A DNA stretch of 64,000 nt from Salpingoeca rosetta (lineage: Eukaryota > Protista > Choanoflagellata), in NCBI GenBank assembly GCA_033442325.1, contig JAWQFM010000013.1, forward strand, positions 1 to 64,000. The letters are read 5' to 3'. Under the pieces are notes generated by a model. It did no database searches, had not been told where the DNA came from, and saw only the letters and a list, made by a program, of their open reading frames with translations. The position numbers were made by a program, and so were the translations under genes. This document shows positions 24,340 to 40,837 of the stretch, piece after piece. Each line of letters opens with the position of its first letter. Position 1 is the first letter of the stretch.

Positions 24340-27300
24340 GAGTCCTGTATCCTTGAGAAGATGAAGCGGTGCGCGGTTCCTCAATACGCACAACAGTGTT
24401 GTCATTGCCTCTCACGCCATCTTCCCCTCCACCCCCGCACCCTCCCCCTCCAGTTATCGGAGTGCGAACCTCAGCCTCACCTCCAGTATCGGCCACTGCA
24501 TCAGCGAGTGTCCCGACGGCGAGTATGAGCTCGGCCAACGGGTGTGCTGAATGCCATTCCACCAAACGCCACCCATTGCATCAACCTGTGCGACGGCAAC
24601 CTCACCAGTCGTGCATTGCCCATTGCCCTCTCGACTACTACGCCAAGGACCACCGCTGCGTGCCATGCACCACGTGCGGCATGGGCACCTGGGCCTCCAC
24701 CCCACGCTCCGCGTCCTCTGACGCCGTCTGCTGTTCCTGGACCGAGCGCAAGCCGGGTCAGAAGGAGTCCGTCTCTGGCAACGCCGTGCGCAACCACCAC
24801 ATGCGTGAGCTGCACCCTTTGGCATGGAGTACCAGCCGCTGCCGGAGCGCGCCTCGTGCTTCCCCACCAGCGTGTGCGAGGAGCCCTTCATCGAGACCAT
24901 CCCGCCCACGCTCACCACGGACCGCCTGTGCTCCTGCGACACGCTCACCTGCAACAAGCTCATCACGCAGCTGTTTGAGGAGATGGTGTGCGCCGGGCCC
25001 ATGGACGAGCAGCTCGACGTTGTGCTTGACGTGTGCTGCGCCGGCCAAGGCGAGGATGGCATCCACAACACCATTCGCCAGATGGATGCCGACGAGGCAC
25101 GCCGCTCCTGCACAGGCTGCACAGACACGTGTGAGTGCAGCGCTAGCTTCATCCTTGTCTACGACGCCGAGTCGGCCGACTGTCGGCCGTGCGACAGCGT
25201 GACGGAGTTCTCCCCATCCATTGGCGGCAGCAGGTGCGAGCCTACTGAGGAGTGCGAGCGCGGCCAGGAGGAGGTCGCCGCGCCAACCTGCTGCTCCTCG
25301 GACCGCGTGCGCCGCGACTGCTCGGCCGGCACCATCGATTCGGACAGCGACGGCTCCATGAGTTGTCAGATGTGCCCCCGGTGGCCACTACACGGAGGCG
25401 GGCTGCCACGGCTCCTGTTCCAGCTTCACCTGCCGCGCGGGCACTCACGACCACGACAGCGACCCCGCCACCCTCGTGCATGGACGTCACAGAGTGCGCG
25501 CCCGGGTTTGAGCAGGTGCGGGCCATGACACTCCTCATCAGCGACCGCGTCTGCGACGAGTGCCCAGAGGGTACGCACAAGGCTGTCTCTGGCCAGGGCG
25601 TGCCCTGTCTCCCCATCATCACCACGTGCGACGCCGGCGAGGAGGAGACGGCCGAGCCCACCCCCACCAACGACCGCGTGTGCAGCCAGTGCGAGCTCGG
25701 CGCCACCTTCAAGCCCGTCCAACGGCCAGGCCGAGTCGTGCCGCCCCGTCACGCAGGGCGGCCCGGATGAGGAGAGATTCGCTTTGCAAACCCACACGCC
25801 AGCACGACCGCCTCTGCCGCAAGTACGTCCAGGACACGTGCGTGGGCGTGACGCGTTGCACTGCCTGGGTGTACATTTCCACGCACGGCCGTGAGCGAGT
25901 GCGAGTTTGGCACCTTCCAGAAGCCAGGCGCTCACGCTCGACTCTGAGCGCGAGTGCACGCTCGAGTGCTCTGAGTGCCCCAGTGGCCGCTTCGAGATTC
26001 GCGCCTGCTCTGCGCTGGAGGACGTGCAGTGCGCCGGCTGCTCCGCGTGCTTGCCAACCACATACATCCTGCGCGCCTGCGACTCAGAGAACGACGTCTT
26101 GCCAGCAGTGCAGCACATGCTCCGATGAGCAGTACCGCAGCGCGCCATGCACCGCCACCAGCAACACGGCATGCATGACGCTCGACGTGTGCGACCAGGA
26201 CCAGTTCTCCAGTTTGAGCTCTTCCCCACCGCCACGCCGACCACGGACCGCATCTGCCGCGACCTAACCCAGTGCAACCCGTCGACGGAGTACGAGCGGA
26301 CCGCCTGTGCCACCTCATCACCAAGTGCGACCCTGGCGAGCAGCGCATCCGCGCCCACCTCCACCTCCGACGCCAAGTGCGAGCCGTGCCCCATCGGCAC
26401 CACCGACGACGACCGCAACCCGATCACCGCCTGCCAGCCGTGCCTCTTACGGCCACCATGTGCCTGCGGGATCCATCGGCTCCTGCAAGCAGTTCCTGTG
26501 CCCGGCCGGCACCGTCGACCTGGACCGCAACGCCAGCACACGCCGTGCACGCCGTGCCATGTTGGCGTGGACTTTGCCGCCCTCTCTGGCCAGCGCAATT
26601 GCACGCCTGTGACGGAGTGCGACCTCGGCTACGAGGAGGTGGTGCGCCCCACCATCTTCACCGACCGCCAGTGCCGCCGCTGCATCGAGGGCCTGTTCTA
26701 CCGCGACAGCACCACGGACTTCTGCATGCGCGTGTCGCCCTGCGAGCCTGGCTCGTTTGAGACAGCCGCGCCCACCATCAGCACGGACCGCGAGTGCCAG
26801 ATGGGCCGCACGTGCCCCAACAGCACCATGTTCATCTCGCGCCCGCTCATGCCCACGCAGAACCGCATCTGCTCGCCGTGAACGCAGTTCCTGTCCAGCG
26901 AGTACGAGCTCGTTGCGCCGTCGCTGGTCAACGACCGCGAGTGCCAGCGCGTGCGCTCGTGCCAGCACACGGAGTGCGAGGTGTCGGCGCCCACGGCCAC
27001 GACAGACCGCCTCTGCGCCACCATGAGCGACGCAATTTGAGGTGCTCCCACCGTGCGTGCGTGCCCGCGTACTTCGTCTCGCTCATCTGTGACGCCAAGT
27101 TCAACGCCCTTGCCGGCACTCAGCCGCGCCGCGAGATGTTTGAGGCCGCGCTGGTGCAGTCCATCAATACGACGCAGGATGCGTCGCAGATTCATTCTGC
27201 GCATCGACCTGCGCCAGGGCACCATTATTGCCACCGTCGCTTCCATCAACGAGGATTTTACGGCGCGCCTCTTCAACCGATCCGTCTCTGGCGACATTAC

Positions 27301-28888: not shown

Positions 28889-29725
28889 ATGTTTCGCTGT
28901 AAAAGTTTGGAGGTGGAGGCCTTGCTGCAACTGACTGATTTGCCGTGTTCTGACAAGGAGAAGATCAGGGCCATCGCCAATAACACGTGTGGGAGCTGGG
29001 TGGGGTGAGTACAAACAGAAACCCGTTGTCACATCTGAAGATTGAATAATCACGTGAAGGACCTTCGACATGTGCTCTTCTTTGCGCTATGTGCCCTTAT
29101 GTCGTCTGTGAATGTTGTCACACTCGGTGTATATGTGTGCGTGTGTGCTTGTGGCACTGCCGGGACGCACGAAGAGCTTCTCTGCTTCTATATGTGTCAG
29201 GTTGTGACTTTGCACCGGTCTCGTGTTTGCCCTATCCTCATTCTCTTGTTCGTTGTTCCACACAATTCGGAATTGCAGGTTTTCTCTTGCTCGCCTTTGC
29301 GAAAGTGGGGCGTGCGCGGTGGCCAGGGCGCTCAAGAACAACACCTGTCTCAGAACACTGAAGTACGTGATGATGTGGACTACGTCGTGCGACACGCATG
29401 GTTGATGTGGGTGTGTACATGTTGCGCCTTCTTTCTCCTTCCTCTTGTCTCTTCTCGCGCACATTCAGGTGCTCATCAATATTCCCTGCGTTTCTGCGTG
29501 CACAGCCTGCATTTGAATTCCGTCAACGATGAGGGCGCTGTGGCACTGGCAAGGAGACTGAAACACAACACCTCCTTGATGTCACTCGAGTGAGTGCGGA
29601 CACACGCATGGAAACCACTCACTATAAACGTGGTGCATTTTGTCTGTGTGTTGTGTGTGCGTGATGGTGTATGTGTGTGTGATGGTGTGTGCGCTTGTGT
29701 GTTGTGTGTGTGTGTGCGTTTGTGC

Positions 29726-29761
<36 letters not shown>

Positions 29762-30284
29762 GTTGGCTATTGTGTGTGTCAGATCTTCGAAGAAGAGGTC
29801 CCGATCTGCAAGGACATACCCCTCGCCATACCCTCAAATCCTTTTATGCCTGGGTATAATACAGACGAGCGTACGTGGCTTACCGAGGAGCAACGAGCCA
29901 GTTTAGGGAACTAGATGGCGCGTCTCCCGGGCCCAGTGATGGGTATGTCTCGCATAGCCATTCCCCTAATAGCGCGCTCTGGCTTCTCGCCCATGCACGA
30001 CGTGAAAGACCGAGGTTCACGCTTACACTGCAAAGCCTTCAATAGCTGTTTCCGACACGTTATAACCCAAGCAGCGTCAGAAACGATGCCCCCACGGGTG
30101 GGTGACATGCGGCGATGTGAATCGAGAGATAGCAACCACTCTCGCCGTAATCTATTGTCGGGAAGACTCGGGCTCGCTGCTCGGGCGAATTTCTTTAAGC
30201 TATAAATCTCGGGCCAGTCTGAGATCTTCGAAGACGAATACGGTTTACGCACCGCATAACGACCAGTGTGTGTGTGCGTTTGTG

Positions 30285-30322
<38 letters not shown>

Positions 30323-33309
30323 TTTGTGCATTGTGTGTGTGCGTTTGTGCATTGTGTGTGTGTGTGTGTGCGTGTGTGTGTACGTTTGTGCATTGTATGT
30401 GTGAATGCAGAATGCAGTTACTGTATCTCACCCACTGTGCTTGACACCCTCTCATTGCTCCTGGCCATCCTATGCGCTGTGGGCAATATCCACTCCACCT
30501 TTGTCTTGCGTGCGCAGGCTGCATCAGAACTCCATCAGCGATGAGGGCGCTGTTGCATTTGCAGAGATGCTCAAGCATAACACCACCCTCAAATCGCTCA
30601 AGTGAGTGAGGGCTCACATCTCTGAATGTACCCGCTGTAAGCATGTGTGTGCTTATGTGCGTGCGTGTGAGTGTGTCTTTGTCTGTGTCTGTGTGCACGC
30701 ATATTGTTTGCGAATGCAGACTGCAGTAGCTGCGTTTCACTCAATGTGCTTGACACCCTCCCAATGCTCCTGGCCACCGTATTCACTGTCATCAACCTCC
30801 ACTTCACATTCCTCTTGTTTGTGCAGGCTGCATTATAATCACATTCGTGATGAGGGTGCTGTGGCGCTTGCAGAAATGCTGAAGCAGAACACCAACTTTA
30901 AATCGTTCAAGTGAGCGAGGGCACACCTGTATTGAATGTATTCGCCGTGAGCATGTGTGTGTGTGTTGATGTGTTGATATGTGTGTTAATGTGTGCGTTA
31001 ATGTGTATGTGTGTGTGTGTGTGTGCGTGTGTGTGTGTGTATGTGTGTGTGTGCACATGCATATTGTATGCGAATGCGGAATGCAGTTTCTGCGTTTCAC
31101 CCATTCTGCTTGACACCCGCTCATCACTTCTGACCATCGTATTCACTGTCGTCAACCTCCACTCCTCCTCTGGCTTGGATGCACAGCCTGATGAGCAATC
31201 AAATCAGCGATGTCGGCGCGATAGCGTTGGCGGAGATGCTCAAGGTCAACACGAGTCTCGAACGCCTGTTGTGAGTCGAAACCCTGCTCCCCCCAACCAC
31301 TCGACAGGGATGGATACCATTGAGCTTGTTCTTGCGAGTATCGTTGACAGCTCAAGGCACAGCCCGCTATGTGTGAAGTGTGCGCATCACTGCAACATGA
31401 GTGCTGTCACATGTTGTGCAATCAGTTTGTTTCCTGTGCATGTGCCTCTACCACCGAATTGCAGGCGCGCAAGGTTGCACCGTGCATGACCTAGCCACGA
31501 CGCGGCGTCGTTCGTGGTGTTCACATGTGCTGCTCGCCTTCAATTTGCCGCCCCTTTCCTGCTCCCTCACTCGTTCCCTTCCCGCATGCATTCCTTGTCA
31601 TGTTTAGCTTGGACAGCAACTCCATCACCCCAGTTGGAGGCGCGGCGCTGGGAGCTGCCCTGGGCCACAACCGCACACTGAAACAGCTTGAGTACGCCGA
31701 TTGCACTACGTTCACCTCATGCATGATCGCGTCCCTCATTGCGGGCAACGCGATCAAGCACGATGGCTGAGTGCATGCTACAGCACAACATGGTGCATCC
31801 GGCTTGCATGTCCGTGCAGAGCCACAAAAACCAACTCGTCACGCATGTACCACATTCCTCCCTTCGACTACATACCACCATGCTGTATGCCGTTCAGGAT
31901 CCAGAAGAACTTCTCCCCCGAAACCGCCCGCGCTTTTGGTGCCGCGCTGCCCGTTCACCGAGTGATCCTCACAACCTGGTCAGTGAATGCATGTTCTCAT
32001 TCCATGTTGATGCTGTGCACTTTGGCTCCCTCGCTCGCACACTGACTGCGTTGCGTTTGTGATGATCGTGTCCCATCCCGTATGTGATTCTGTGTTTGCA
32101 GGTCTGACGACAAGGAGGGCAAGGCCGCCTTCATCAAAGCACGCAAGGAGAAGCAGCAGCAGCTGAAGCAACTGTTTGTGGCTTGCAGGGGTGGCGATGT
32201 TCCCGCTGTCACTTCCTTCATCAACCAAGACCATGCAGACATCAACGAACAGGATGAGCACGTGTGTTCATGAAATATGAAGGGACTGGTTTGTTGTTCC
32301 ACTGCTCGCATGCTCGTGCTCGTGGGTTCTCACCATACGTGCTCCGTGTCCGTTTCTATTCAATCTACACAGGGCGACACGTTGCTCCACATCGCTTGCA
32401 AATACAGCCAACTTGCCATTGCGAACCTTCTCCTCGAACACGGCGCCAATGCTGTGATCGAGAATGACGAGGTGAGGCTCACCCCTCCCCTTGTGTTGAG
32501 CCCAATAATAATGTGGGCACTGGTTCCTAGGTTCCTTGCTCGACGCTGTCGTCTCCTTTGTACTTCTGCCAAACTTTCCTTCCGCTATCTCCCACCTTCT
32601 GGTGATTACATTACTGCACGTGTTGACTGCACGTGCTCACGTTTGCAGGGAGAGACGCCGTACGATTTGGCTGAAGCCGGTGGCCACACTGCCATCACCA
32701 GCATTGAGGAGATTCTTGCTGGCAGCAAGCTTCATGAGCAAGAGTCCTCGGACCAAGCTGTGCGTTGTGTGTGTGTGTGTGTGTTTGTGTGTGTGTGTAT
32801 GTGTGTTTGTGTGTTTGTGTGTGTGTGTGTATGAGTGTTGCGTGTTGTGTTTATGTGTGCGTGAGTGTTGTGTACATGCGTGTGTGTATGTGTGTGTGTG
32901 TGTTGTGTATATGTGTGTGTATGTCTGTACAGGGATGCAAACGCATGCAGGCGTGATTGCTCCTCCTCCACTTGACGATCACACCCTCTTTCATCAACCT
33001 TCTTGCTCATTCGCGTTGCAGTCATCTTCAACCGAAACCTCCGCTGCACCACCGCATCCAACCCCTGCTTCTTCTTCATCATCCCCATTTGAGCCCGAGC
33101 TGACAGAATGGCTCAAGCGCCACTCGCTGCTGCCGCACGTTGAACCAGCCTTGGTGGAACACGGCATCGATAAGCTGGACGTGCTGGTGGAGGCCGTGAA
33201 TGACGGCGATTTGACGAAAGCCATGCTGAAAGAGGCCGGTGTCAAGATTGGGTCGGCAATCAAGCTGATCCAAGAAGCAACGAAGTGCTCCCTGGCAAGT
33301 TCTGAGTAG
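28889..33309 (+). CDS. RI-like LRR - ankyrin - SAM protein (possibly the 5' part of the downstream TIR/SH2 receptor gene)
   Basis: Exon 1 at 28889-29004 (MFRCK...IANNTCG). Six 84-bp phase-2 LRR exons (29279-29362, 29506-29589, 30518-30601, 30827-30910, 31187-31270, 31608-31691; LxxNxIxDEGAxALAExLKxNTTLxxL). Ankyrin exons GDTLLHIACKY...LLLEHGA and GETPYDLA. SAM-like LTEWLKRHSL...LVEHGID...LKEAGVKIGSAIKL. Confidence 0.85.
29777..30265. mobile_element. ~490-bp compositionally foreign insertion in an intronic (GT)n tract; candidate solo LTR or small non-autonomous element
   Basis: Non-repetitive, TpA-rich sequence interrupting a CGTTTGTGCATTGTGTG/(GT)n array. Can be read as TG...CA termini. 13-bp direct repeat AGATCTTCGAAGA at 29781-29793 and 30222-30234; TATAAA at 30201. 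A target-site duplication cannot be judged inside the microsatellite. Confidence 0.45.
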
Positions 33310-33930
33310 CGTCACGCCTTTATCGGTCCTGTCTCATCTCCAGTTTGCCATTACTCCCTTTCAGCTTACATTTGCCGTCCTGTCTTCATGTTGCATGATG
33401 CCCTGAGTGTTGCGTGCCGTCGCAATGTCGCGTTGAGCTCTGCACGCTCTTGCCTTGCATCATTTCAAGCGTTTCTTGTTTCTCCTCATGTCAGTCCTGT
33501 TGCGTACATCTGCTGTTGTTCGAGTGCACTGCGTGAGGGCCCCTACGCGTTGCTTCTTTGCTTCACCCCCTCGCCCCAAACACGTGATGCTTTTCCTATC
33601 AAAATACATGCCCTTTTGCAGCTTGCGCGTCGCATCACACCTTCAGACCCTCACTTCACTTCGCAACAAAGCATTCAATTGATTCTTGTGCGTGTCCTTG
33701 ACACACACTGCCGCGCATGAGCGCCGAAAGTATGGGCAAAACTTTCTCCAATTGTCCCCTTTGCGCGCCTTTTGCTCACATGAGCGAGACCAACAACAAC
33801 CCCATTTTGCTTTTCTCGCTTTTTGTCCTTGTGCTTGTTGTCTCCACACAACACAACAACACGCGGCTTCCACCAATCGACCATTGAGCACACACCCCTC
33901 CTCCTTCCACACTGAGCCCACAACGCCTGC

Positions 33931-34703
33931 ATGAGCAGGGCGTGTGACGTGTTCATCTCGGCGGTGCCGGGAGAAGCCGACGCGGCCGGTGAAACCCTGA
34001 AGGCAAGCCTGGATGACCGTGCGTTGGACACGTTTCTCGATCTCACACCAACGCCCACCCCGTCCGCGGGTTCAAGCACTAGCTCATCGTCTCATGGCCC
34101 GGACGTGCCACGTGCAGCTGCTTTGCGTGCATGCAAGCTTGTGGTCATCTTGGGGACGCCATCCTACGGATTAGAGGTGCCTGCAAGCACGCCCAGTGAT
34201 GACAACGTTGATGATGATCAAGACCAGGACAGCGGAAGCGACGCCGCCTGCCAACAATACGGCGACACTGGTTGTCCGGACAAGAACAGTAAGGCTTCGA
34301 GCAAGCAGCAGAAGCGCAACCCGACGGCGAGCGACCTTGCGTTCGTGTTGCAGCACCAGAAGCCACTTGTGGTCATCGACATGTGCCAGTCTGCGTTTAA
34401 TTCGCCGTCGGTGCAGGAGCGCTTGCTGCACAGTGCTCACGCCACCAAAGTTGACTGGCACCTGGACACAACAACGGACACGACCATCAGTGTTCCCGCT
34501 CCCGTCCTGGCATGCATCTCTGACAAACTAATGGTGCGTGTGCGTGTGCGTGTGCTTGTGCGTGTGTGTGCGTGTGTGTGCGTGTGTGTGTGTGTGTGTG
34601 CGTGCGTGTGTGTGCGTGCGTGTGCGTGTGCGTGTGCGTGTGCGTGTGCGTGTGCGTGTGCGTGTGTGTGTGCGTGTGTGTGTGTGTGTGCGTGTGCGTG
34701 TGC

Positions 34704-34747
<44 letters not shown>

Positions 34748-35143
34748 GTGCGGGTGTGCGTGTGCGCGCAGGGTGCGTGCACTTGTGTGTCTGGTGCTGT
34801 GGGCGCTCACCTTGCGTTCCCCCGCTCCCACCACACACGCAAATACATGTTCTCCACACCAGAGCGTCTCCTTCTCTAGGCAGGCTCGATCCATCAATTT
34901 GGTGCCAACAGTTGAAGGCTCGATCCCTGCAAGCACGGACACAAACACGGACAAGCTGTACGAAGATGGAAACATTGTCGATCAGCCTGGCATGGCTGTC
35001 AATCTCGCAGTTGAAGTTGCGCGCTCCTTCCCAATTCAGCAAGCTGAAGCGCAGAAAGCACTGTCGAACGGGCAGCACCCACCTGGCACATTTATTCTGC
35101 GGGATGGCCCTGTACCAAACACCATCATCATAGCCCTGGTGCG

Positions 35144-35178
<35 letters not shown>

Positions 35179-38100
35179 GGATGAACTTGTCCATGCATAC
35201 TCACCCTTCTTCATACCATCTCTCTCTCCTTTTCCTTTCGTGACCACTCTTGTCGCCTGCCCTATTTCCCCTTCCTCCTCCTACACCCTGTTTCCCTGCA
35301 CAGCTCGCACGGGAGGGCGTTGTCGAGGAGCATACGCTCACGAAACACGACAGTCACTCTTTTTCCCTGAACAACGAGCTCTTGCCAAAGGAGTGCACCA
35401 CGCTTCAAGCCATCATCTCCCATCTCAAGACCAACCCTCACTCGCTTCCCCTCCCGGTACGTGCCGGCGATTTTCCAACACACTGCCACAACACAACACA
35501 ACACAACACAACACGACACAAACACAACACAACACAACACAACACAACACAACACAACACAACACAACACACGAGGCGCTCTCGCACAACTGCCTCACAC
35601 CTCCTCTCCTTTGCCCTCCTTTGCTCTCCCAACCCTCTCCATCCCCTGCACACCTTCAGCTGGGGAATGCCGTGGTGCTGCCGCACGTGTATGAGAAGAC
35701 AACCCCCAAGGGAAGCACACCACCCTTGAAACCCGGACATGTGCAGTCCCTGCAGCCCAGCCACCATTCTTCGCCGCAGTCCAACTACGAAGCCACATTG
35801 TCCAATGCTCACTCCGGTGAGGCTGGCAGCAACCACGGCAGCCACCCCAGTGGAATGCCTTCGCGTGGTGCAGCGGGGATGCGAGGCCTGCCCGCCGCCG
35901 TCGGTCAGGGACGTGCTGATCAGCCCATTCGACTGTACGGCGATCCCACGAACCCGGGCGGAGTACCGACGCGACCGCTCTATGTGCATGTTCCGCCAGC
36001 CGGGCAAACGGCCATCGATCCAAGCTCATTCAAGGTGTACGGCGACGCAAACGCCTCAACAGGAGCGCGCGATCAAGAGAGGCAACAGCAGCAGCCAGGC
36101 CCACAGGAGCAAGCGCCGCCCGGCAACAGCAAGGGCCAGGACTACCTTGAGCCTGTGAGCACGCGGCCATCCTCGTCCATCCCAAACTGCTATGGGCAAA
36201 TCATGGCCAACCCCGACTACGAGCACCTCAAGCCCGAGTACGACCACATCTCGGAGGACGACGAGTTTGGTCTGCCGACGACCGAGCAGCTGCGTACCTT
36301 TGAGATGGAGCTCAGCGGCGACGGCACCAGCGGTGCACATGACGAGCATGCACAGCGACAGCAGCAGGGACGCCCAAGAAAGGCCGCAAGGGCAGCGCGT
36401 GGCGATGGAAAGGGCTCTCTCACTGAGAACCCGGTCCTCGCCTGGTGCTCCGCGCTGTGCGTGCTGTGCGGACTTGGCTCGTGCGGCAAGCGCCGTCTCA
36501 GAATCATCGCAGGCGTCTCAGTCTTCGCCTTGGTCATCATCATCGTTGCAGCCGTTGCGGCAACGTCAGCCGGCGGCGGTGGTGGTGGAAATGGCCCCAG
36601 CAGCGCGGCAGCAGCGACGTGCGAGACGATCCTGCCGCTCACACTCGATTGCCTGGACACAGAGTCAACCACCCTAGTGGAGTATGCGGCCGTCAACTCA
36701 GGGCCCGTGTGCGAGGTGCAGCGTGTGGAGAACTGCTGCTGCGACGCCTTCTTCACCTTGGCCCGTGTCAACGGCTCGGTGCACGTCGTCGCCAACGCTA
36801 CGAGCCCCACGTCCCTGAGCCTCGGCTCCCACCTCACGTACATCGCCGGTGACTTTATCATCGACACCACACCACCTTCACCCTCCTCCTCCTCCTCCTC
36901 CTCCTCCTCCTCCTCCTCCTCCTTTGCCGGTGTGGCTGTACAGTCATCGTCCTTGCTGCCCATGTTGGCTATGGTTGATTTTGGCGTCGTCGAGCGCATT
37001 GGTGGGAGCGTCCGCGTGGCTGGATTTGGCGCGCTGACGCACGTTGACTTCCGTCAACTGACCTTCATTGGCGGATCTCTTGATCTCCGAGACAGTACCG
37101 TCCTCCACTCACTCAGCCTTGAGCAGGTGGCCAGCGTCGGTGGCAGCGTCGTGCTCAACAACACCTCCCTGACCAGCATCGATTTTGGCGCGCTCACACA
37201 GGTTGCAGGCGATCTTTCGCTCGCCTCAACTCCCGTCACGAGCATCGACCTTGCCAGGATCGCACACATCGGCGGCACCCTAACCATGCGCCAGGACACC
37301 CCCCACCTCGAGACAGTCCGTCTTGGGCAGCTCACGCGTGTTGGGGGCGACGTGGTGCTTGCAGGCACCGCTGTTCGTGCTGTGGCGCTTGCGCGTATGA
37401 CCACCATCGGCGGCAGCTTGCTCGTGCGCGATAACAACCTGCTCACGTCCATCCAGCTCAACGACCTGGCACACGTCGGCGCCGGCATGGTTCTCTCCAG
37501 CAACGATCTGCAGTTCATCAACTTTGCTCACGTGCCGTCCGTTGGCAGTGAGCTCGACATCAGCAACAACGAGCGCCTGACGATGCTGCAGCTGGGTTCA
37601 CTCACACGTGTGGACGGCAGCTTCAGCCTGGCGACCTGCGGGTTCACGGCCGTTGACTTTTCGGGACTTGAGCGCGTCGGTGGCGACCTCGATGTAAGCA
37701 ACAACGCCCTGACCAGCATCGCGTTTGGCAGCGCGCTGACGATGGTAGGCGGCGATGTGAACCTCAGCAACAACGGTTTCGACTACCTTGACGCTATTCT
37801 CGGCGAGGGCGCCTCATCAACACAAGCAGGGGCAGCAACCGCGGTGCTCCCTGTCATTGGGGGCAGCCTTGTTCTTGCTGGTAACCTGCTCCCCTCCGCC
37901 AGCATGAGGGCGTTTCCTGCGACAATCGGCGGCGCCGTGGATCTTAGCAACAACCTGCTGTCCAGCCTGTCGTTTGACGGGCTGACGAGCCTTGAGTTTG
38001 GCGTCCTGGCCGCGAACAACAACGGGCTGCAATATGTGGACCTGCGTGACGTGACTGCGGTGCACGGTGACCTGGATCTGAGCTTGACCGGTTTGTACAC

Positions 38101-39970
38101 GTTGGTGGCGACAAAGGTGGACCTGTTTGCCGGCGACGTGATTCTCGCCGACAACCGCCTAGGCTCCATCCTGTTCTCCAGCACCCTTACCCGCATTGCA
38201 GGCAGCCTCATCCTCAGCCACAACACCATCTATTCCATTAACTTCCCAGCGACACTCACGCACATCGGCGGCTCGCTCGAGCTCATCAACGACAACCTCC
38301 AATCCGTGGACCTGGGCGCAATCAGAACCATTGGCGACAGTCTCGTCGTTGCCAGCAGCGCTTCCCTCAACTCGTTTGACTTTGGAGACGTCACTCAGAT
38401 TGGCGGCAGCATCGTCATCACCAACACTACGCTCTCCTCCTTTGAGCCTCCGGCCTCAATGACAACGCTGAACGGAGACCTTGACCTGAGCAACACGGAG
38501 CTGAGCAGTTTCTCGCTCGGCCAGATCACCGCCATCACGGGCAGCCTGCTGCTGTCGCGCACGTCGCTGCAGCAGCTGCTGCTGCCAGGGTTGCAGTCCC
38601 TTGGCGGTTCGCTGGACGTCTCCGGCAGCAGCCAGCTCACCCGCGTCTCGTTTGGGCAGCTGACCAGCCTTGCTGGCGGCAGTCTCGTCGTGCACAGCAC
38701 TGCCGTGACCTCGCTCCCGCTCAACGACATCACTGCCGTTGGCGGCGACATTGACGTGCGCAGTTGCGCCAACCTCAGTACCCTGGACCTGGGCCCCCAC
38801 ATCACGGCTGTGCCCGGAAGCGTTCTCGCCATGAACAGTGGGCTGACGAGCATCGATCTGAGAAACGTGCGCCGCATCGGCCGCAACCTGAACGTCTCTG
38901 GCAGCAGTGACGCTGGGCTTGACCTTGACGTCGGCGCGTTGGAGTATGTGGGCGGGGCTGTGGATGTGAGTCGTACCAGTCTCGCCACCTTTGACCTGCG
39001 GGCGCTGGCGGTGATTGGCGGCGACTTGCGGATTGTGGATGCAGATGCACTGGCCGTGCTGGATGTGGGGGCGCTGACGCGCGTGGACGGGTCCTTCGTG
39101 CTGGATGAGTGCGACACGCTGCCTTCCCTTGGCTTTGGCGGCATTCGCTCCATCGGTGCCGATGTGCAGCTGAGCTCGAACCCTCGTCTCCTGCACGTCG
39201 ACGTTGGCAACGCCCTGACCCGGATTGCCGGTGTGCTACGCGTGGCCAACATGGACGGCCTGTCAGCGCTGGAGCTGGATCGAGTCGCCAGCGTGCACGC
39301 CGTTGACATTTCGTACTGCGAACCGCTGGTCAGGATCACGTTTCCCGCGCTCACACACATCGAAGATGGGATTACCATCACGGCGGTGGGCGTGGAAAGC
39401 GTCGACTTCCCCCTGCTCACAGGCTCGGTCCGATACGCAACATTTAACGCCCTCACAGCATCGCGTGTTTCACTGGGCGGCCTCCAGGAAGTCGCGGAGA
39501 CCTTAAACGTCCATCTACTCCAAGCGCTTCAGCAGCTGGACTTTGGAGCCATCACCCGTGTTGGAGGCAACGTTCACGTCACAGGGTTAGGGAGCGCCAG
39601 CGGGATTGCAATTGACTTTGCCGGCATCTCCACGATTGACGGTGCCGTTGAGGTCTCTGGCTGTGCCGCGGCTTCGCTGGACTTTGGCGCGTTGCGCTCT
39701 GTGGGTGGTGACTTGACTGTCGCTGACAACGGCCTCACGCAACTCAGCCTCGGCAGCATTTCAACCGTTGGCGGCAGTGTCAACCTCTTTGACGAGTCGT
39801 GGGCGGCACTGGACGTGGGCGCGCTGAAACAAGTGAGCGGTCAGGTCTATGTGTACCTGGGCGCCACCACGTCACTCAACTGCAACGGCTTTACTGCGGA
39901 ATGCTTGGCCGTCGAGGCAGCAGAAACAGCAACGCCACAGCTGATGCGTTGCCCAGACCCATGCTCATGA
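33931..39970 (+). CDS. Type II membrane protein: TIR-like - SH2 - Tyr-motif linker - TM - ~45 receptor-L-domain/LRR repeats (exons ~33931-34533, 34884-35138, 35304-35456, 35660-39970)
   Basis: All three introns are phase 0 GT-AG. TIR-like: CDVFIS...LKASL...[38 protein letters not shown]2: QAEAQKAL...PGTFILRD...HTL...[31 protein letters not shown] (~36502-36565) preceded by KRRLR. Then ~22-aa repeats LxxIGGxLxLxxNxLTSIDLxx up to the C-terminus. Confidence 0.85.
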
Positions 39971-40043
39971 TTCTGACGCGTGTGTGTGCGTGTGTAAGCG
40001 GAGGGAGGTTGGAAGGGGAGAGGGCGCTTGAGTGAGTGAGTGA

Positions 40044-40120
<77 letters not shown>

Positions 40121-40204
40121 TGTGCGTGTGCGTGTGTCCTTCCTACTCCGAACATGCTTGGCCGTTCTTTCCTTAACTTGCTCGCCTGTGTGCGGTGTTG
40201 TGTA

Positions 40205-40837
40205 CGCGCTCGATCCATTCGTCTGTTGTCCATTCGCCGCTGCTCTCGTCCGCACTGTACATCGCGACCGAGACAGGACATGTTCATGTGTGTGAGAGAG
40301 AGTGTGTGTGTGCGTGTGTGTGTGAGTGTGTGTGTGTGTGAGAGAGAGAGTGTGTGTGTGAGTGTGAGTGTGAGTGTGAGTGTGAGTGAGTGTGTGTGTG
40401 TGCGTGTGTGTGTCAGTTCATGGACACGCGCCACGGTGCAAGCTAACCAGCTTCACCAACAATCAAAAAGCACAAGTACACAGACACAAACGCAGACACA
40501 CAAGCAAGAACCAACAACTCCACATTGAACAAAGCAATGCACGGTGCTTGTGCTCACGTGGATGTAAAGACGAGATCGCTGCCGCGCGTCTCGATGCGGA
40601 AGGAGCGGATGAGGAATTTGCTTCCGGTGGCGTACGCGTAGCTGTTGTAGTCGTCGACGTACAGCTTGCCCTCAGCGGTGGACGAAGAGTCCAGTGCGGC
40701 CACGAGCGTAAACGGGTCGTGATGGGTCAGGCCAGACGTCCTGACAGCAGTTGTGGTGCGATGGGGCAACGGGGGAGAAGAGGTGAGGCGGTGATGGTGA
40801 TGATGGTGATGATGATGATGATGATGATGATGATGAC

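What the first reader, a model, noticed from the sequence alone, without database searches (positions are those of the whole stretch)
33931..39970. 'Inverted Toll-like' receptor: cytoplasmic TIR + SH2 + Tyr motifs, extracellular C-terminal LRR/L-domain solenoid
Seen in sequence: phase-consistent splicing joins a TIR-like domain, an SH2 domain, a linker with about eight Tyr motifs (VYEK, NYEA, LYGD, VYGD, DYLEP, CYGQ, DYEH, EYDH), a Cys cluster plus KRRLR, one hydrophobic helix and ~45 repeats of ~22 aa. There is no signal peptide. Established: Toll-like receptors are type I (LRR outside at the N-terminus, TIR inside at the C-terminus), and the positive-inside rule predicts N-in topology here. 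Inference: the same sensor/TIR logic assembled in reverse order and wired to phosphotyrosine signalling by its own SH2 domain, i.e. a candidate independently evolved pattern-recognition receptor. I do not know of a described receptor with this architecture.
Basis: partly seen in the sequence, partly recalled or inferred. Interest (0 to 1): 0.9.

Follow-up and report, generated by a model that had tools for sequence, protein, structure and literature searches.

The report
Inverted TIR-SH2 membrane receptor gene
This is a real four-exon gene of the choanoflagellate Salpingoeca rosetta. It puts a Toll-type TIR domain, an SH2 domain and a tyrosine-rich linker inside the cell, and a very long leucine-rich-type repeat rod outside. 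That is the reverse order of a Toll-like receptor, and the genome holds about ten genes built this way.

Summary
The window is S. rosetta contig C13. Four phase-0 GT..AG exons (33931-34533, 34863-35138, 35304-35456, 35660-39970) encode 1780 aa. RNA contigs show junctions 2-3 and 3-4. Junction 1-2 is supported only indirectly.

- **TIR:** exon 1 has no Pfam hit. It is 33-34% identical to four paralogs that do hit TIR_2/TIR, and its model matches the SARM1 TIR (Z 13.9, 129 residues).
- **SH2:** spliced exons 2+3 score 37 bits (E 2.5e-10) against a profile of 20 verified S. rosetta SH2 domains.
- **Rest of the protein:** nine linker tyrosines, one membrane helix (KR 4 before, 0 after), then about 43 repeats of 22-23 aa (Recep_L_domain 2.4e-17) between conserved cysteine caps.

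The gene is not unique. Four loci are TIR-SH2-TM-solenoid, including PTSG_03080, and further loci have TIR or SH2 alone. The scan noted the same architecture on another piece of this genome (s1-432383). Richter et al. 2018 list SH2 among TIR partners in proteins without a membrane segment. I found no paper describing the membrane form.

The window copy is the most divergent and has Asp at the catalytic-Glu position. The pattern-receptor role is inference. RNA contigs favour a separate upstream LRR-ANK-SAM gene. Verdict: new variant of a known kind, interest 0.62.

The parts
33931..34533 (+). Exon 1 (aa 1-201): divergent TIR domain with two low-complexity inserts (aa ~38-57 and ~81-131). Asp135 sits at the SARM1 catalytic-Glu column.
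   Evidence: 33-34% identity to four paralog exons that hit Pfam TIR_2/TIR. The AF2 model matches the SARM1 TIR at Z 13.9, rmsd 2.7-2.8 A over 129 residues. The profile-to-tir-1 alignment gives the Glu column.
34534..34862 (+). Intron 1 (329 nt, GT..AG, phase 0), mostly a (GTGCGT)n microsatellite.
   Evidence: TRF rows; splice sites; an X4 RNA contig begins aligning at 34862 with 60 unplaced letters before it.
34863..35138 (+). Exon 2 (aa 202-293): spacer plus the N-terminal half of the SH2 domain (about 35022-35138, '[12 protein letters not shown]...GTFILRD' with the betaB Arg).
   Evidence: Pfam SH2 E 0.16 on this half alone. Spliced to exon 3 it scores 37.1 bits, E 2.5e-10, against a profile of 20 S. 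rosetta SH2 domains.
35139..35303 (+). Intron 2 (165 nt, GT..AG, phase 0), starting with a (GT)n run.
   Evidence: The X4 loose end at 35303 equals 35116-35137, the end of exon 2.
35304..35456 (+). Exon 3 (aa 294-344): C-terminal half of the SH2 domain ('VVEEHTL...[11 protein letters not shown]').
   Evidence: Family profile A4 finds it at E 1.3e-25 together with the homologous paralog exons. Joint SH2 score.
35457..35659 (+). Intron 3 (203 nt, GT..AG, phase 0), containing a (CACAA)n repeat.
   Evidence: Joint 35455->35659 (cut +1), GT..AG, in an X4 RNA contig of depth 4.1. TRF.
35660..36427 (+). Start of exon 4 (aa 345-600): disordered cytoplasmic linker with nine tyrosines, mostly in acidic contexts (VYEK, NYEA, LYGD, LYVH, VYGD, DYLEP, CYGQ, DYEH, EYDH).
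   Evidence: No Pfam family on this stretch. Paralog linkers also carry Tyr motifs, e.g. YEEI in the C4 copy.
36434..36502 (+). Juxtamembrane Cys cluster (C607, C611, C614, C619) and the basic patch KRRLR (aa 621-625).
   Evidence: Translation. Four Lys/Arg in the 15 residues before the helix and none in the 15 after.
36503..36565 (+). Single transmembrane helix (aa ~626-646), predicted N-in/C-out (type II signal anchor).
   Evidence: The only 19-residue window with mean Kyte-Doolittle hydropathy above 2 (peak 3.05). The same single helix preceded by basic residues is present in all four paralogs.
36620..36763 (+). Ectodomain N-cap with conserved cysteines ('C..LDC...C....NCCCDAFF').
   Evidence: The 'LDC...NCCC[DE]EFY' motif is conserved in the C9, C4 and C8 paralogs but not in the C30 copy. 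It is modelled as a helix plus the first strands.
36965..39877 (+). About 43 repeats of 22-23 aa forming a beta-solenoid of the L-domain / LRR_5 type (LRR clan).
   Evidence: Pfam Recep_L_domain 2.4e-17 and LRR_5 1.1e-7, both above the curated cut-offs. Autocorrelation. AF2 model of the first 401 ectodomain residues has pLDDT 82.4 and regular strands. Foldseek top hits are Toll/TLR4/GARP/SHOC2 LRRs at low TM.
39881..39970 (+). C-terminal Cys cap ('C..F.AEC...............RCPDPCS') and the TGA stop. No second hydrophobic segment.
   Evidence: The cap motif 'C....C.........NCP..C' ends all four paralogs as well. Stop codon.

Best explanation
The locus is one expressed, intact S. rosetta gene for a 1780-aa single-pass type II membrane protein.

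Layout, from N to C:
- Cytoplasm: a TIR domain (a SARM1-like fold, from a subfamily with at least 38 loci in S. rosetta), an SH2 domain, and a 256-aa disordered linker with nine tyrosines.
- Membrane: one helix, preceded by a Cys cluster and KRRLR.
- Outside: a cysteine-capped rod of about 43 L-domain/LRR-type repeats.

It belongs to a modular family in this genome in which a [TIR]-[SH2] cassette is joined through one helix to such a rod.

Proposed mechanism (inferred, not shown):
1. The rod binds an extracellular ligand, either multivalent or surface-bound.
2. Receptors cluster.
3. Linker tyrosines are phosphorylated by one of the many S. rosetta tyrosine kinases.
4. The receptor's own SH2 binds those phosphotyrosines in trans, as in reciprocal STAT dimerisation.
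5. The N-terminal TIR domains are thereby concentrated and signal by TIR-TIR assembly.

In paralogs that keep the catalytic Glu, NAD+ cleavage is possible. In this copy, with Asp135, a scaffold role is more likely.

What is shown: gene structure, two of three junctions, domain identities, paralogy. What is inferred: topology (from the positive-inside rule and ectodomain features), and ligand binding, phosphorylation, SH2 use and TIR output.
For: - Gene model. The intron positions match the annotated model of paralog PTSG_03080.
- RNA: junctions 35138|35304 and 35456|35660 in X4 contigs, and contigs tiling 33904-37500 and on to about 40046.
- TIR: alignment A1; four of five members hit TIR_2 (best 3.9e-7); PDB profile hits are all TIR proteins; Foldseek; VIA Z 13.9 to SARM1.
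- SH2: 37.1 bits against at most 7.5 bits for 2000 shuffles. Paralog PTSG_05359 passes the Pfam SH2 cut-off and matches the SYK SH2 domains.
- Topology and ectodomain: and Pfam.
- Family.
Against: - No direct Pfam TIR hit for the window copy. Its TIR is the most divergent in the family: 33-34% identity, against 41-57% among paralogs. It carries two long disordered inserts and has Asp instead of the catalytic Glu.
- The SH2 lacks the alphaA Arg (Gln in its place), although the betaB Arg and betaD His are present.
- Expression is low: depth 1-5 in X4 and essentially no reads in three raw RNA-seq runs.
- The exon 1-2 joint was not displayed.
- The TIR is about 420 residues from the membrane, so simple dimerisation-driven TIR apposition as in TLRs is unlikely.
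- No ligand, kinase or partner is known. No topology predictor was available.
Confidence: 0.55

Rival explanations
1. Surface or adhesion glycoprotein rather than a signalling receptor. The solenoid would be a structural glycocalyx, cell-cell or substrate-adhesion rod, as in fungal Ecm33/Sps2-type L-domain proteins. The cytoplasmic TIR-SH2 part would only tether or regulate it.
For: The closest non-choanoflagellate sequence relatives of the ectodomain include fungal Ecm33 and bacterial surface LRR_5/L-domain proteins. S. rosetta has at least 35-40 such solenoid loci, and most have no TIR or SH2 hit beside them. The rod is very long, about 43 repeats.
Against: TIR, SH2 and Tyr-rich linkers are signalling modules. 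The same cassette is also joined to a 4-TM LHFPL-like domain in PTSG_05359, which suggests a portable signalling unit.
Confidence: 0.2
2. A decaying paralog. The gene is transcribed and still open, but its TIR, and perhaps its SH2, have lost function. The protein would then act at most as a decoy or be on the way to pseudogenisation.
For: The window TIR is the family outlier and falls below every Pfam TIR threshold. It has low-complexity inserts with pLDDT below 50 and Asp at the catalytic-Glu column. RNA depth is very low.
Against: A 1780-codon reading frame stays open across four exons with canonical splice sites. The TIR core still folds confidently onto SARM1. The SH2 score equals that of its paralogs. 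The Cys caps and the repeat consensus are conserved.
Confidence: 0.15
3. Exon 4 is also, or mainly, expressed as a separate shorter transcript from an internal start, so much of the RNA does not encode the TIR-SH2 part.
For: The X4 contig covering 37274 to about 40046 has depth 22.5, against 1-5.5 for contigs over 33904-37225.
Against: At least one RNA contig joins exon 3 to exon 4. Contig depth is a mean of k-mer counts in a repeat-rich region with many paralogs, and 3' bias is common. A product starting inside the solenoid would have no signal sequence.
Confidence: 0.1
4. One 11-kb gene.
For: The SAM_2-like exon ends 620 nt upstream on the same strand. A possible acceptor at 33916/33917, preceded by a pyrimidine-rich tract, would keep the frame (read from the sequence). 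The gene's own annotated protein was not found among proteins of 790-2513 aa.
Against: An X4 contig runs unspliced from 33022 through the stop at 33307-33309 to 33598. Depth is zero over 33656-33839. A separate contig starts at 33904, upstream of that acceptor. An in-frame TGA lies at 33913-33915. The paralogs start with Met just before the TIR.
Confidence: 0.05

Closest known systems
Toll-like receptors (animals and choanoflagellates: signal peptide, LRR, TM, TIR)
   Same: An extracellular repeat solenoid of the LRR clan, one membrane helix and a cytoplasmic TIR domain. Foldseek's best matches for the ectodomain model are Toll, Toll5A and TLR4.
   Different: The order and topology are reversed: N-terminal cytoplasmic TIR, no signal peptide, type II anchor. 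The solenoid is L-domain/LRR_5 type with low TM-score to TLR horseshoes (0.2-0.37). An SH2 domain and a Tyr-rich linker lie between the TIR and the membrane, so the TIR is about 420 residues from the helix.
SARM1 / C. elegans TIR-1 TIR domain
   Same: Best structural match for exon 1: Z 13.9, rmsd 2.7-2.8 A, 129 of about 140 residues. It is also the best PDB profile hit. Three paralogs keep Glu at the SARM1 E642 column.
   Different: There are no ARM or SAM domains in this gene. Identity is only 15-20%. The window copy has Asp135 at the catalytic column. Plant TIRs score within about 1 Z unit, so the preference for SARM1 is weak.
Choanoflagellate TIR combinations in Richter et al. 2018 (PMC6040629): 'Kinase TLRs', 'Kinase TIRs' and TIR with Ank, Arm or SH2
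   Same: That paper states that SH2 is among the domains found with TIR in several choanoflagellate species, so the TIR-SH2 pairing has been noted.
   Different: Those TIR+SH2 proteins are described as lacking a transmembrane domain. The membrane helix plus C-terminal L-domain ectodomain and the type II orientation are not described there, nor in any other paper I could search.
S. rosetta paralogs PTSG_03080 (860 aa) and PTSG_05359 (597 aa), UniRef 'SH2 domain-containing protein'
   Same: PTSG_03080 has the same exon structure and the same TIR-SH2-linker-TM-Cys cap-solenoid-Cys cap order. PTSG_05359 shares the TIR-SH2 cassette.
   Different: The window protein is twice as long, with about 43 repeats and a 256-aa linker against about 65 aa. 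It is much more divergent in the TIR. PTSG_05359 replaces the single helix and solenoid with a 4-TM LHFPL/claudin-like domain.
EGFR / insulin-receptor L domains and fungal Ecm33
   Same: Pfam Recep_L_domain match above threshold. Ecm33 proteins appear among the sequence relatives. As with receptor tyrosine kinases, there is a Tyr-rich cytoplasmic segment suited to SH2 docking.
   Different: No kinase domain, no furin-like Cys-rich domain between L domains, one continuous rod of about 43 repeats, and the opposite membrane orientation.
Type II receptors with N-terminal cytoplasmic Tyr motifs (Dectin-1 cluster C-type lectin-like receptors), and the TIR adaptor BCAP
   Same: Dectin-1-type receptors are type II, with cytoplasmic N-terminal Tyr motifs that recruit SH2 proteins (title and topic of PMC3634610; the details are my own knowledge). 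BCAP has an N-terminal TIR and links to SH2-containing PI3K (PMC5241739).
   Different: These are functional analogies only. There is no sequence relationship, and none of those proteins carries TIR, SH2 and ectodomain in one chain.

Membership tests
TIR domain (Pfam TIR / TIR_2) | Sequence match to the family profile above the curated cut-off | tested here: not met
   Exon 1 gives no Pfam family at E<=1. It is also absent from the genome-wide TIR_2 and TIR scans at E<=10.
TIR domain (Pfam TIR / TIR_2) | Homology to proteins that do match the profile | tested here: met
   33-34% identity over 137-143 aligned residues to four paralog exons. Four of the five members hit TIR_2 (best 3.9e-7) and three hit TIR (1.7e-5). 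Profile A1 finds exon 1 at E 3e-51, but exon 1 is itself one of the five rows of A1, so that score is partly circular.
TIR domain (Pfam TIR / TIR_2) | Flavodoxin-like TIR fold (five parallel strands alternating with helices) | tested here: met
   The AF2 model has the order beta-alpha x5. VIA gives Z 13.9, rmsd 2.7-2.8 A over 129 residues to the SARM1 TIR, and nearly all of the best 36 rows are TIR domains. Eight of the first ten Foldseek hits are TIR domains, with probability 0.99-1.00.
Enzymatic (NADase) TIR domains | Catalytic glutamate (SARM1 E642 column) | tested here: not met
   The profile-to-tir-1 alignment places the Glu of 'HKEL' on the second E of the paralogs' 'EEL'. In alignment A1 the window has Asp135 ('ASDL'), C30 has Ile, and C9, C4 and C8 have Glu. 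Activity with Asp cannot be tested here.
SH2 domain (Pfam PF00017) | Profile match across the whole domain | tested here: met
   Spliced exons 2+3 score 37.1 bits, E 2.5e-10, against an HMM built from 20 S. rosetta SH2 domains. Those 20 domains scored 32-78 bits in the genome scan, against a cut-off of 21. The best of 2000 shuffles scores 7.5 bits. The Pfam model itself could only be run on the separate exons: E 0.16 and no hit. Paralog PTSG_05359 reaches 22.5 bits, above the cut-off of 21.
SH2 domain (Pfam PF00017) | Phosphotyrosine-binding residues (betaB5 Arg of the FLVR motif, alphaA2 Arg, betaD4 His) | tested here: inconclusive
   Read from the sequence. 'FILRD' keeps the betaB Arg and 'VVEEH' keeps the His. 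The alphaA position is Gln ('[10 protein letters not shown]'), where the C4 paralog has Arg. Binding itself cannot be tested with these tools.
Toll-like receptor | Signal peptide, N-terminal extracellular LRRs, TM, C-terminal TIR (type I) | tested here: not met
   The order is TIR, SH2, linker, TM, repeats. The N-terminus is not hydrophobic. The basic residues precede the helix.
Receptor L-domain / LRR_5 solenoids (LRR clan) | Profile match above the cut-off and a regular right-handed beta-solenoid | tested here: met
   Recep_L_domain 63.5 bits (cut-off 21.8) and LRR_5 32.2 bits (cut-off 27.7). Period 22-23 aa. Model pLDDT 82.4 with a repeating strand pattern.
S. rosetta TIR-SH2-TM-solenoid paralog family (PTSG_03080 type) | Same domain order, same three phase-0 intron positions, and the conserved 'NCCC[DE]EFY' N-cap and 'NCP..C' C-cap | tested here: met
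   Exon ends and starts are homologous in the C9, C4 and C8 copies. Caps. The annotated PTSG_03080 protein has the same junctions.
SARM1 orthologs | ARM repeats, two SAM domains and a TIR in one protein | tested here: not met
   No ARM or SAM domain in the gene. The SAM-like exon upstream belongs to a transcript that runs unspliced through its own stop codon.

The most novel reading that the evidence does not exclude
S. rosetta has a lineage-specific family of about ten 'inverted' type II surface receptors. In them, an LRR-clan ectodomain is coupled to TIR signalling through the receptor's own SH2 domain and phosphotyrosine sites. This would be an independent invention of Toll-like logic fused to tyrosine-kinase signalling. 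Some members would sense bacteria, prey or conspecific cues, and so would be candidates for the unknown receptors behind choanoflagellate responses to bacteria.
Probability: 0.25. Interest if true: 0.85.

Novelty: new variant of a known kind. Interest (0 to 1): 0.62.

Why it matters
[quoted passage not shown] This family is a set of surface proteins that hard-wires an LRR-type ectodomain to both TIR and phosphotyrosine modules. Animals connect those two systems only through separate adaptors such as BCAP or SCIMP. The family therefore gives concrete, knock-out-ready candidates in a tractable organism.

It also shows that the 'repeat sensor + TIR' combination can be assembled in either membrane orientation. 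That bears on how often such receptors arose independently. Finally, domain-by-domain annotation misses the architecture, because the SH2 is split by an intron, the TIR is divergent, and the membrane part is unlabelled. Similar families may be hidden in the same way elsewhere.

Tried and rejected
- **Direct Pfam on the exons.** No TIR hit and only a weak half-SH2, so it was insufficient alone.
- **Genome-wide Pfam SH2, TIR_2 and TIR scans.** The locus is not among the hits. They served only to find verified domains and paralogs.
- **phmmer of exon 1 against 1.8 billion representatives.** One hit at E 4.7e-5 over the low-complexity insert (residues 72-105) with no TIR family. I treat it as spurious.
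- **The search for homologous proteins with exon 4.** Only PTSG_04244 at 30% identity came back. The gene's own annotated protein was not found among proteins of 790-2513 aa. I could not establish whether or how this gene is annotated publicly.
- **Raw RNA-seq runs X21-X23.** Practically no reads on the gene, apart from paralog reads at 33107-33140. Expression therefore rests on one run's contigs (X4).
- **Loose end after 33629.** Not found anywhere in the window. Unexplained, perhaps a chimeric contig.
- **Fetching the remaining 19-20 TIR-subfamily loci.** The census of architectures rests on coordinates only.
- **Metagenome scan with the TIR profile.** Two short loci that were not informative.
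- **P0003 residues 1-290 against the protein collection.** No Monosiga or other named choanoflagellate homolog. Hits were one S. rosetta paralog and three metagenome proteins with other partners (MORN, WD40, and a canonical-order NHL-LamG-TM-TIR).
- **Foldseek of the ectodomain model.** It places the model in the LRR class, but TM-scores of 0.2-0.37 are too low to choose between L-domain and classical LRR.
- **One-gene fusion with the upstream SAM exon.** Considered and judged unlikely (see rivals).
- **Complex prediction.** Not used, because phosphotyrosine-dependent binding cannot be modelled there.
- None occurred. Read laying was given 5,501 letters.

Full report
**Identity of the DNA.** The genome (G000) is 55.4 Mb in 68 contigs and carries at least 131 SH2 matches. 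It encodes Salpingoeca rosetta PTSG_04244 at 100% identity. The window is therefore S. rosetta, contig C13:1-64000.

**Gene model.** Reading 33700-35800 and checking by script gives four exons:
- exon 1, 33931-34533
- exon 2, 34863-35138
- exon 3, 35304-35456
- exon 4, 35660-39970

All introns are GT..AG and phase 0, and they are largely filled by GT-rich or CACAA microsatellites. A TGA lies in frame 16 nt upstream of the ATG. The product is 1780 aa with no internal stop.

Run X4, kept as contigs, is clearly cDNA, because it skips GT..AG introns in the upstream gene.
- It joins 35456 to 35660 directly.
- It has a contig whose 22 unaligned letters before 35303 are the unique end of exon 2 (35116-35137).
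- It has a contig that starts aligning at the exon-2 acceptor with 60 unplaced letters in front. The exon 1-2 joint itself was not listed, because rows touching the skipped repeat 34527-34772 were dropped.
- Its contigs tile the gene from 33904 onwards.
- Depth is 1-5 for the 5' 3.3 kb and 22.5 for a 2773-nt contig over the 3' part. This could be 3' bias, paralog k-mers or an additional internal start.

**The upstream neighbour is probably separate.** The RI-type LRR, ankyrin and SAM-like exons appear to belong to their own gene. An X4 contig runs unspliced from 33022 through the stop at 33307-33309 to 33598. Depth is then zero over 33656-33839, and the next contig starts at 33904. Contigs show presence, not absence, so I leave 5% for a fused isoform.

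**TIR.** Exon 1 alone has no Pfam hit and is not picked up by genome-wide TIR_2 or TIR scans. Those scans, combined with the L-domain hits, revealed loci where a TIR_2 match sits just upstream of an L-domain array.
- I fetched four of these loci. They have the same exon structure as the window gene.
- Their first exons align with the window's at 33-34% identity. The window adds two low-complexity inserts.
- Four of the five sequences hit TIR_2 (best 3.9e-7) and three hit TIR.
- A profile of the five finds only TIR proteins at the top of the PDB list: tir-1, RPV1, SARM1 and TIR-STING, at E 0.02-0.2.
- An AlphaFold model has mean pLDDT 67.7, with the core blocks at 80-93 and the inserts below 50. 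It has the beta-alpha x5 order.
- Foldseek ranks SARM1, SIGIRR, IL-18Rbeta, TLR and MyD88 TIRs first.
- VIA-align gives Z 13.9, rmsd 2.7-2.8 A over 129 residues to the SARM1 TIR. Plant TIRs follow at Z of about 13.

So the TIR claim is right, through homology and fold rather than a direct profile hit. At the column of the SARM1 catalytic Glu, three paralogs have Glu, one has Ile and the window copy has Asp135. The window TIR is the family outlier: 33-34% identity, against 41-57% among the others.

**SH2.** The domain is split by intron 2, which is why the exon-wise scans miss it. I built an HMM from 20 intron-free S. rosetta SH2 domains that scored 32-78 bits in the Pfam genome scan.
- The spliced exon 2+3 peptide of the window scores 37.1 bits (E 2.5e-10). 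This is the same range as three paralogs (36.8-46.7 bits).
- The best of 2000 shuffles reaches 7.5 bits.
- The annotated paralog PTSG_05359 passes Pfam's SH2 cut-off (22.5 bits) and matches both SYK SH2 domains in the PDB.
- The betaB Arg (FILRD) and betaD His are present. The alphaA Arg is replaced by Gln.

**Linker, membrane and ectodomain.**
- Residues 345-600 have no family match and carry nine Tyr, 3.5% against 1.0% in the ectodomain.
- One 19-residue window exceeds mean hydropathy 2 (peak 3.05, residues about 626-646). Four Lys/Arg lie in the 15 residues before it and none in the 15 after.
- The four paralogs have the same single helix. Basic residues before it outnumber those after it in three of them and tie in the C30 copy.
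- Beyond the helix lie eight N-glycosylation sequons (one on the N-terminal side) and a Cys-rich N-cap. The cap motif 'LDC...NCCC[DE]EFY' is conserved in the C9, C4 and C8 paralogs but not in C30.
- Then come about 980 residues with a 22-23-aa period, or about 43 repeats, and a C-terminal cap 'C....C....NCP..C' that ends every family member.
- Pfam calls Recep_L_domain (2.4e-17) and LRR_5 (1.1e-7), both above their cut-offs.
- A model of the first 401 ectodomain residues is confident (pLDDT 82.4, pTM 0.81) and is a regular beta-solenoid. Foldseek's best hits are Toll, TLR4, GARP and SHOC2 LRRs, but at TM 0.2-0.37, so only the class is established.
- N-in/C-out is the only orientation consistent with cytosolic TIR and SH2, the positive-inside rule and the disulfide- and glycan-rich C-terminal part. 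It remains a prediction.

**The family.** A profile of the five TIR exons finds 38 loci in the genome. A profile of the SH2 C-terminal exon finds 14. L-domain arrays occupy at least 35-40 loci. By coordinates and strand:
- TIR+SH2+solenoid: C13 (the window), C9, C4:55x and C8 (PTSG_03080, 860 aa; UniRef 'SH2 domain-containing protein', Pfam TIR_2).
- TIR+solenoid: C30, C35:63x, C10:91x and C31:70x.
- SH2+solenoid: C32:41x and C26:66x.
- TIR-SH2 with a 4-TM LHFPL/claudin-like domain: PTSG_05359.

The cassette is therefore modular and the architecture is not an annotation accident.

Outside S. rosetta, the TIR subtype turns up in metagenome proteins with other partners: MORN, WD40, and one canonical-order NHL-LamG-TM-TIR. 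I found no inverted homolog in another named species. Both searches are limited in sensitivity and length range.

**Literature.**
- Richter et al. 2018 (PMC6040629) describe choanoflagellate TLRs, 'Kinase TLRs' and 'Kinase TIRs'. They state that SH2 is among the domains found with TIR in proteins lacking a transmembrane domain.
- A 2026 preprint assays one S. rosetta TIR, from an unrelated 1352-aa protein.
- Suga et al. (PMC4342544) do not mention TIR.
- Searches combining choanoflagellate, TIR, SH2, receptor L domain and type II found no description of a TIR-SH2-TM-solenoid receptor.
- The scan's own first readers noted the same architecture on another piece of this genome (s1-432383) and the split SH2 (s1-432710). 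Those are unchecked notes and not independent evidence.

**Mechanism.** What is shown is the parts list. The most economical working model is as follows. Ligand-driven clustering of the rods leads to phosphorylation of the linker tyrosines. The receptor's own SH2 then binds those sites in trans. That concentrates the N-terminal TIR domains, which signal by TIR-TIR assembly, or by NAD+ cleavage in the paralogs that keep the Glu.

The long distance from TIR to membrane argues against a TLR-like direct dimerisation switch. It favours the SH2/pTyr step as the coupling device. For this particular copy, the divergent TIR with Asp135 and the low expression leave real room for a decoy or decaying role.

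**Verdict.** The finding is a new variant of known kinds, with known domains in a new order and orientation. It is partly visible in public annotation, the TIR+SH2 pairing is partly foreshadowed in print, and it occurs as a family.

Noticed in passing
window 29279-33309 (+): The upstream gene has RI/NLR-type LRR exons (LRR_6 E 8e-4 on one 30-aa exon), ankyrin repeats (Ank 3.2e-7) and a C-terminal SAM_2-like exon (E 6.6e-4). X4 RNA contigs splice 32261|32373 and 32469|32647 and run through its stop at 33307-33309 to about 33598.
   Followed up: partly
window 33107-33140: A 34-nt stretch in the SAM-like exon attracts RNA reads at 95-99% identity, with loose ends on both sides. Contig depth there is about 165, against 1-6 around it. 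The reads probably come from highly expressed paralogs that share this piece.
   Followed up: no
window 26129-27100 (+): A long open frame rich in spaced cysteines, with a weak TNFR_c6 match (E 0.004, below the cut-off). It is probably the ectodomain of another receptor-like gene.
   Followed up: partly
window 37274-40046: The 3' 2.8 kb of exon 4 lies in one X4 contig of depth 22.5, while contigs over 33904-37225 have depth 1-5.5. A 'goes back 342' joint (37500->37159) reflects the internal repeats. Possible causes are 3' bias, paralog k-mers or an internal start.
   Followed up: no
window 33629: An X4 contig continues after 33629 with 255 letters (AGAACACCTTTAGCTCGCGG...) that occur nowhere in the window. 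It could be a chimeric contig or a join to a distant exon.
   Followed up: partly
P0032 (PTSG_05359), probably G000:C14:1320421-1321538: The same TIR-SH2 cassette is joined to a 4-TM LHFPL/claudin-like domain (L_HMGIC_fpl 2.2e-13). The cassette is therefore attached to more than one kind of membrane module.
   Followed up: partly
G000, 38 loci listed: A large S. rosetta TIR subfamily (consensus 'DVFISLRF.EA...LGTRTYG...STFEEL.YI...KPFFLVKMC'). Most members could not be inspected. Metagenome relatives pair this TIR with MORN repeats, WD40 repeats or a canonical NHL-LamG-TM-TIR order.
   Followed up: partly
L028 (G000:C4:549000-555500, minus strand), linker of the C4 paralog: The linker contains 'EQKYEEIAGG', that is YEEI, the textbook optimal Src-family SH2 binding motif (my own knowledge), beside 'VVYDV' and 'QVYACP'.
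   Followed up: no
L029 (G000:C30:542500-548500, minus strand): This paralog has the TIR, linker, TM, solenoid and C-cap but no recognisable SH2 exons. It has Ile at the catalytic-Glu column. A run of N (withheld or masked) lies at one end of the locus.
   Followed up: partly
window 34534-34766, 35139-35179, 35487-35571, 40032-40413: All three introns and the 3' flank are dominated by GT-rich or CACAA microsatellites. The paralogs' introns have (GT)n at the same places. Such repeats may explain gaps or missing models in older assemblies.
   Followed up: no
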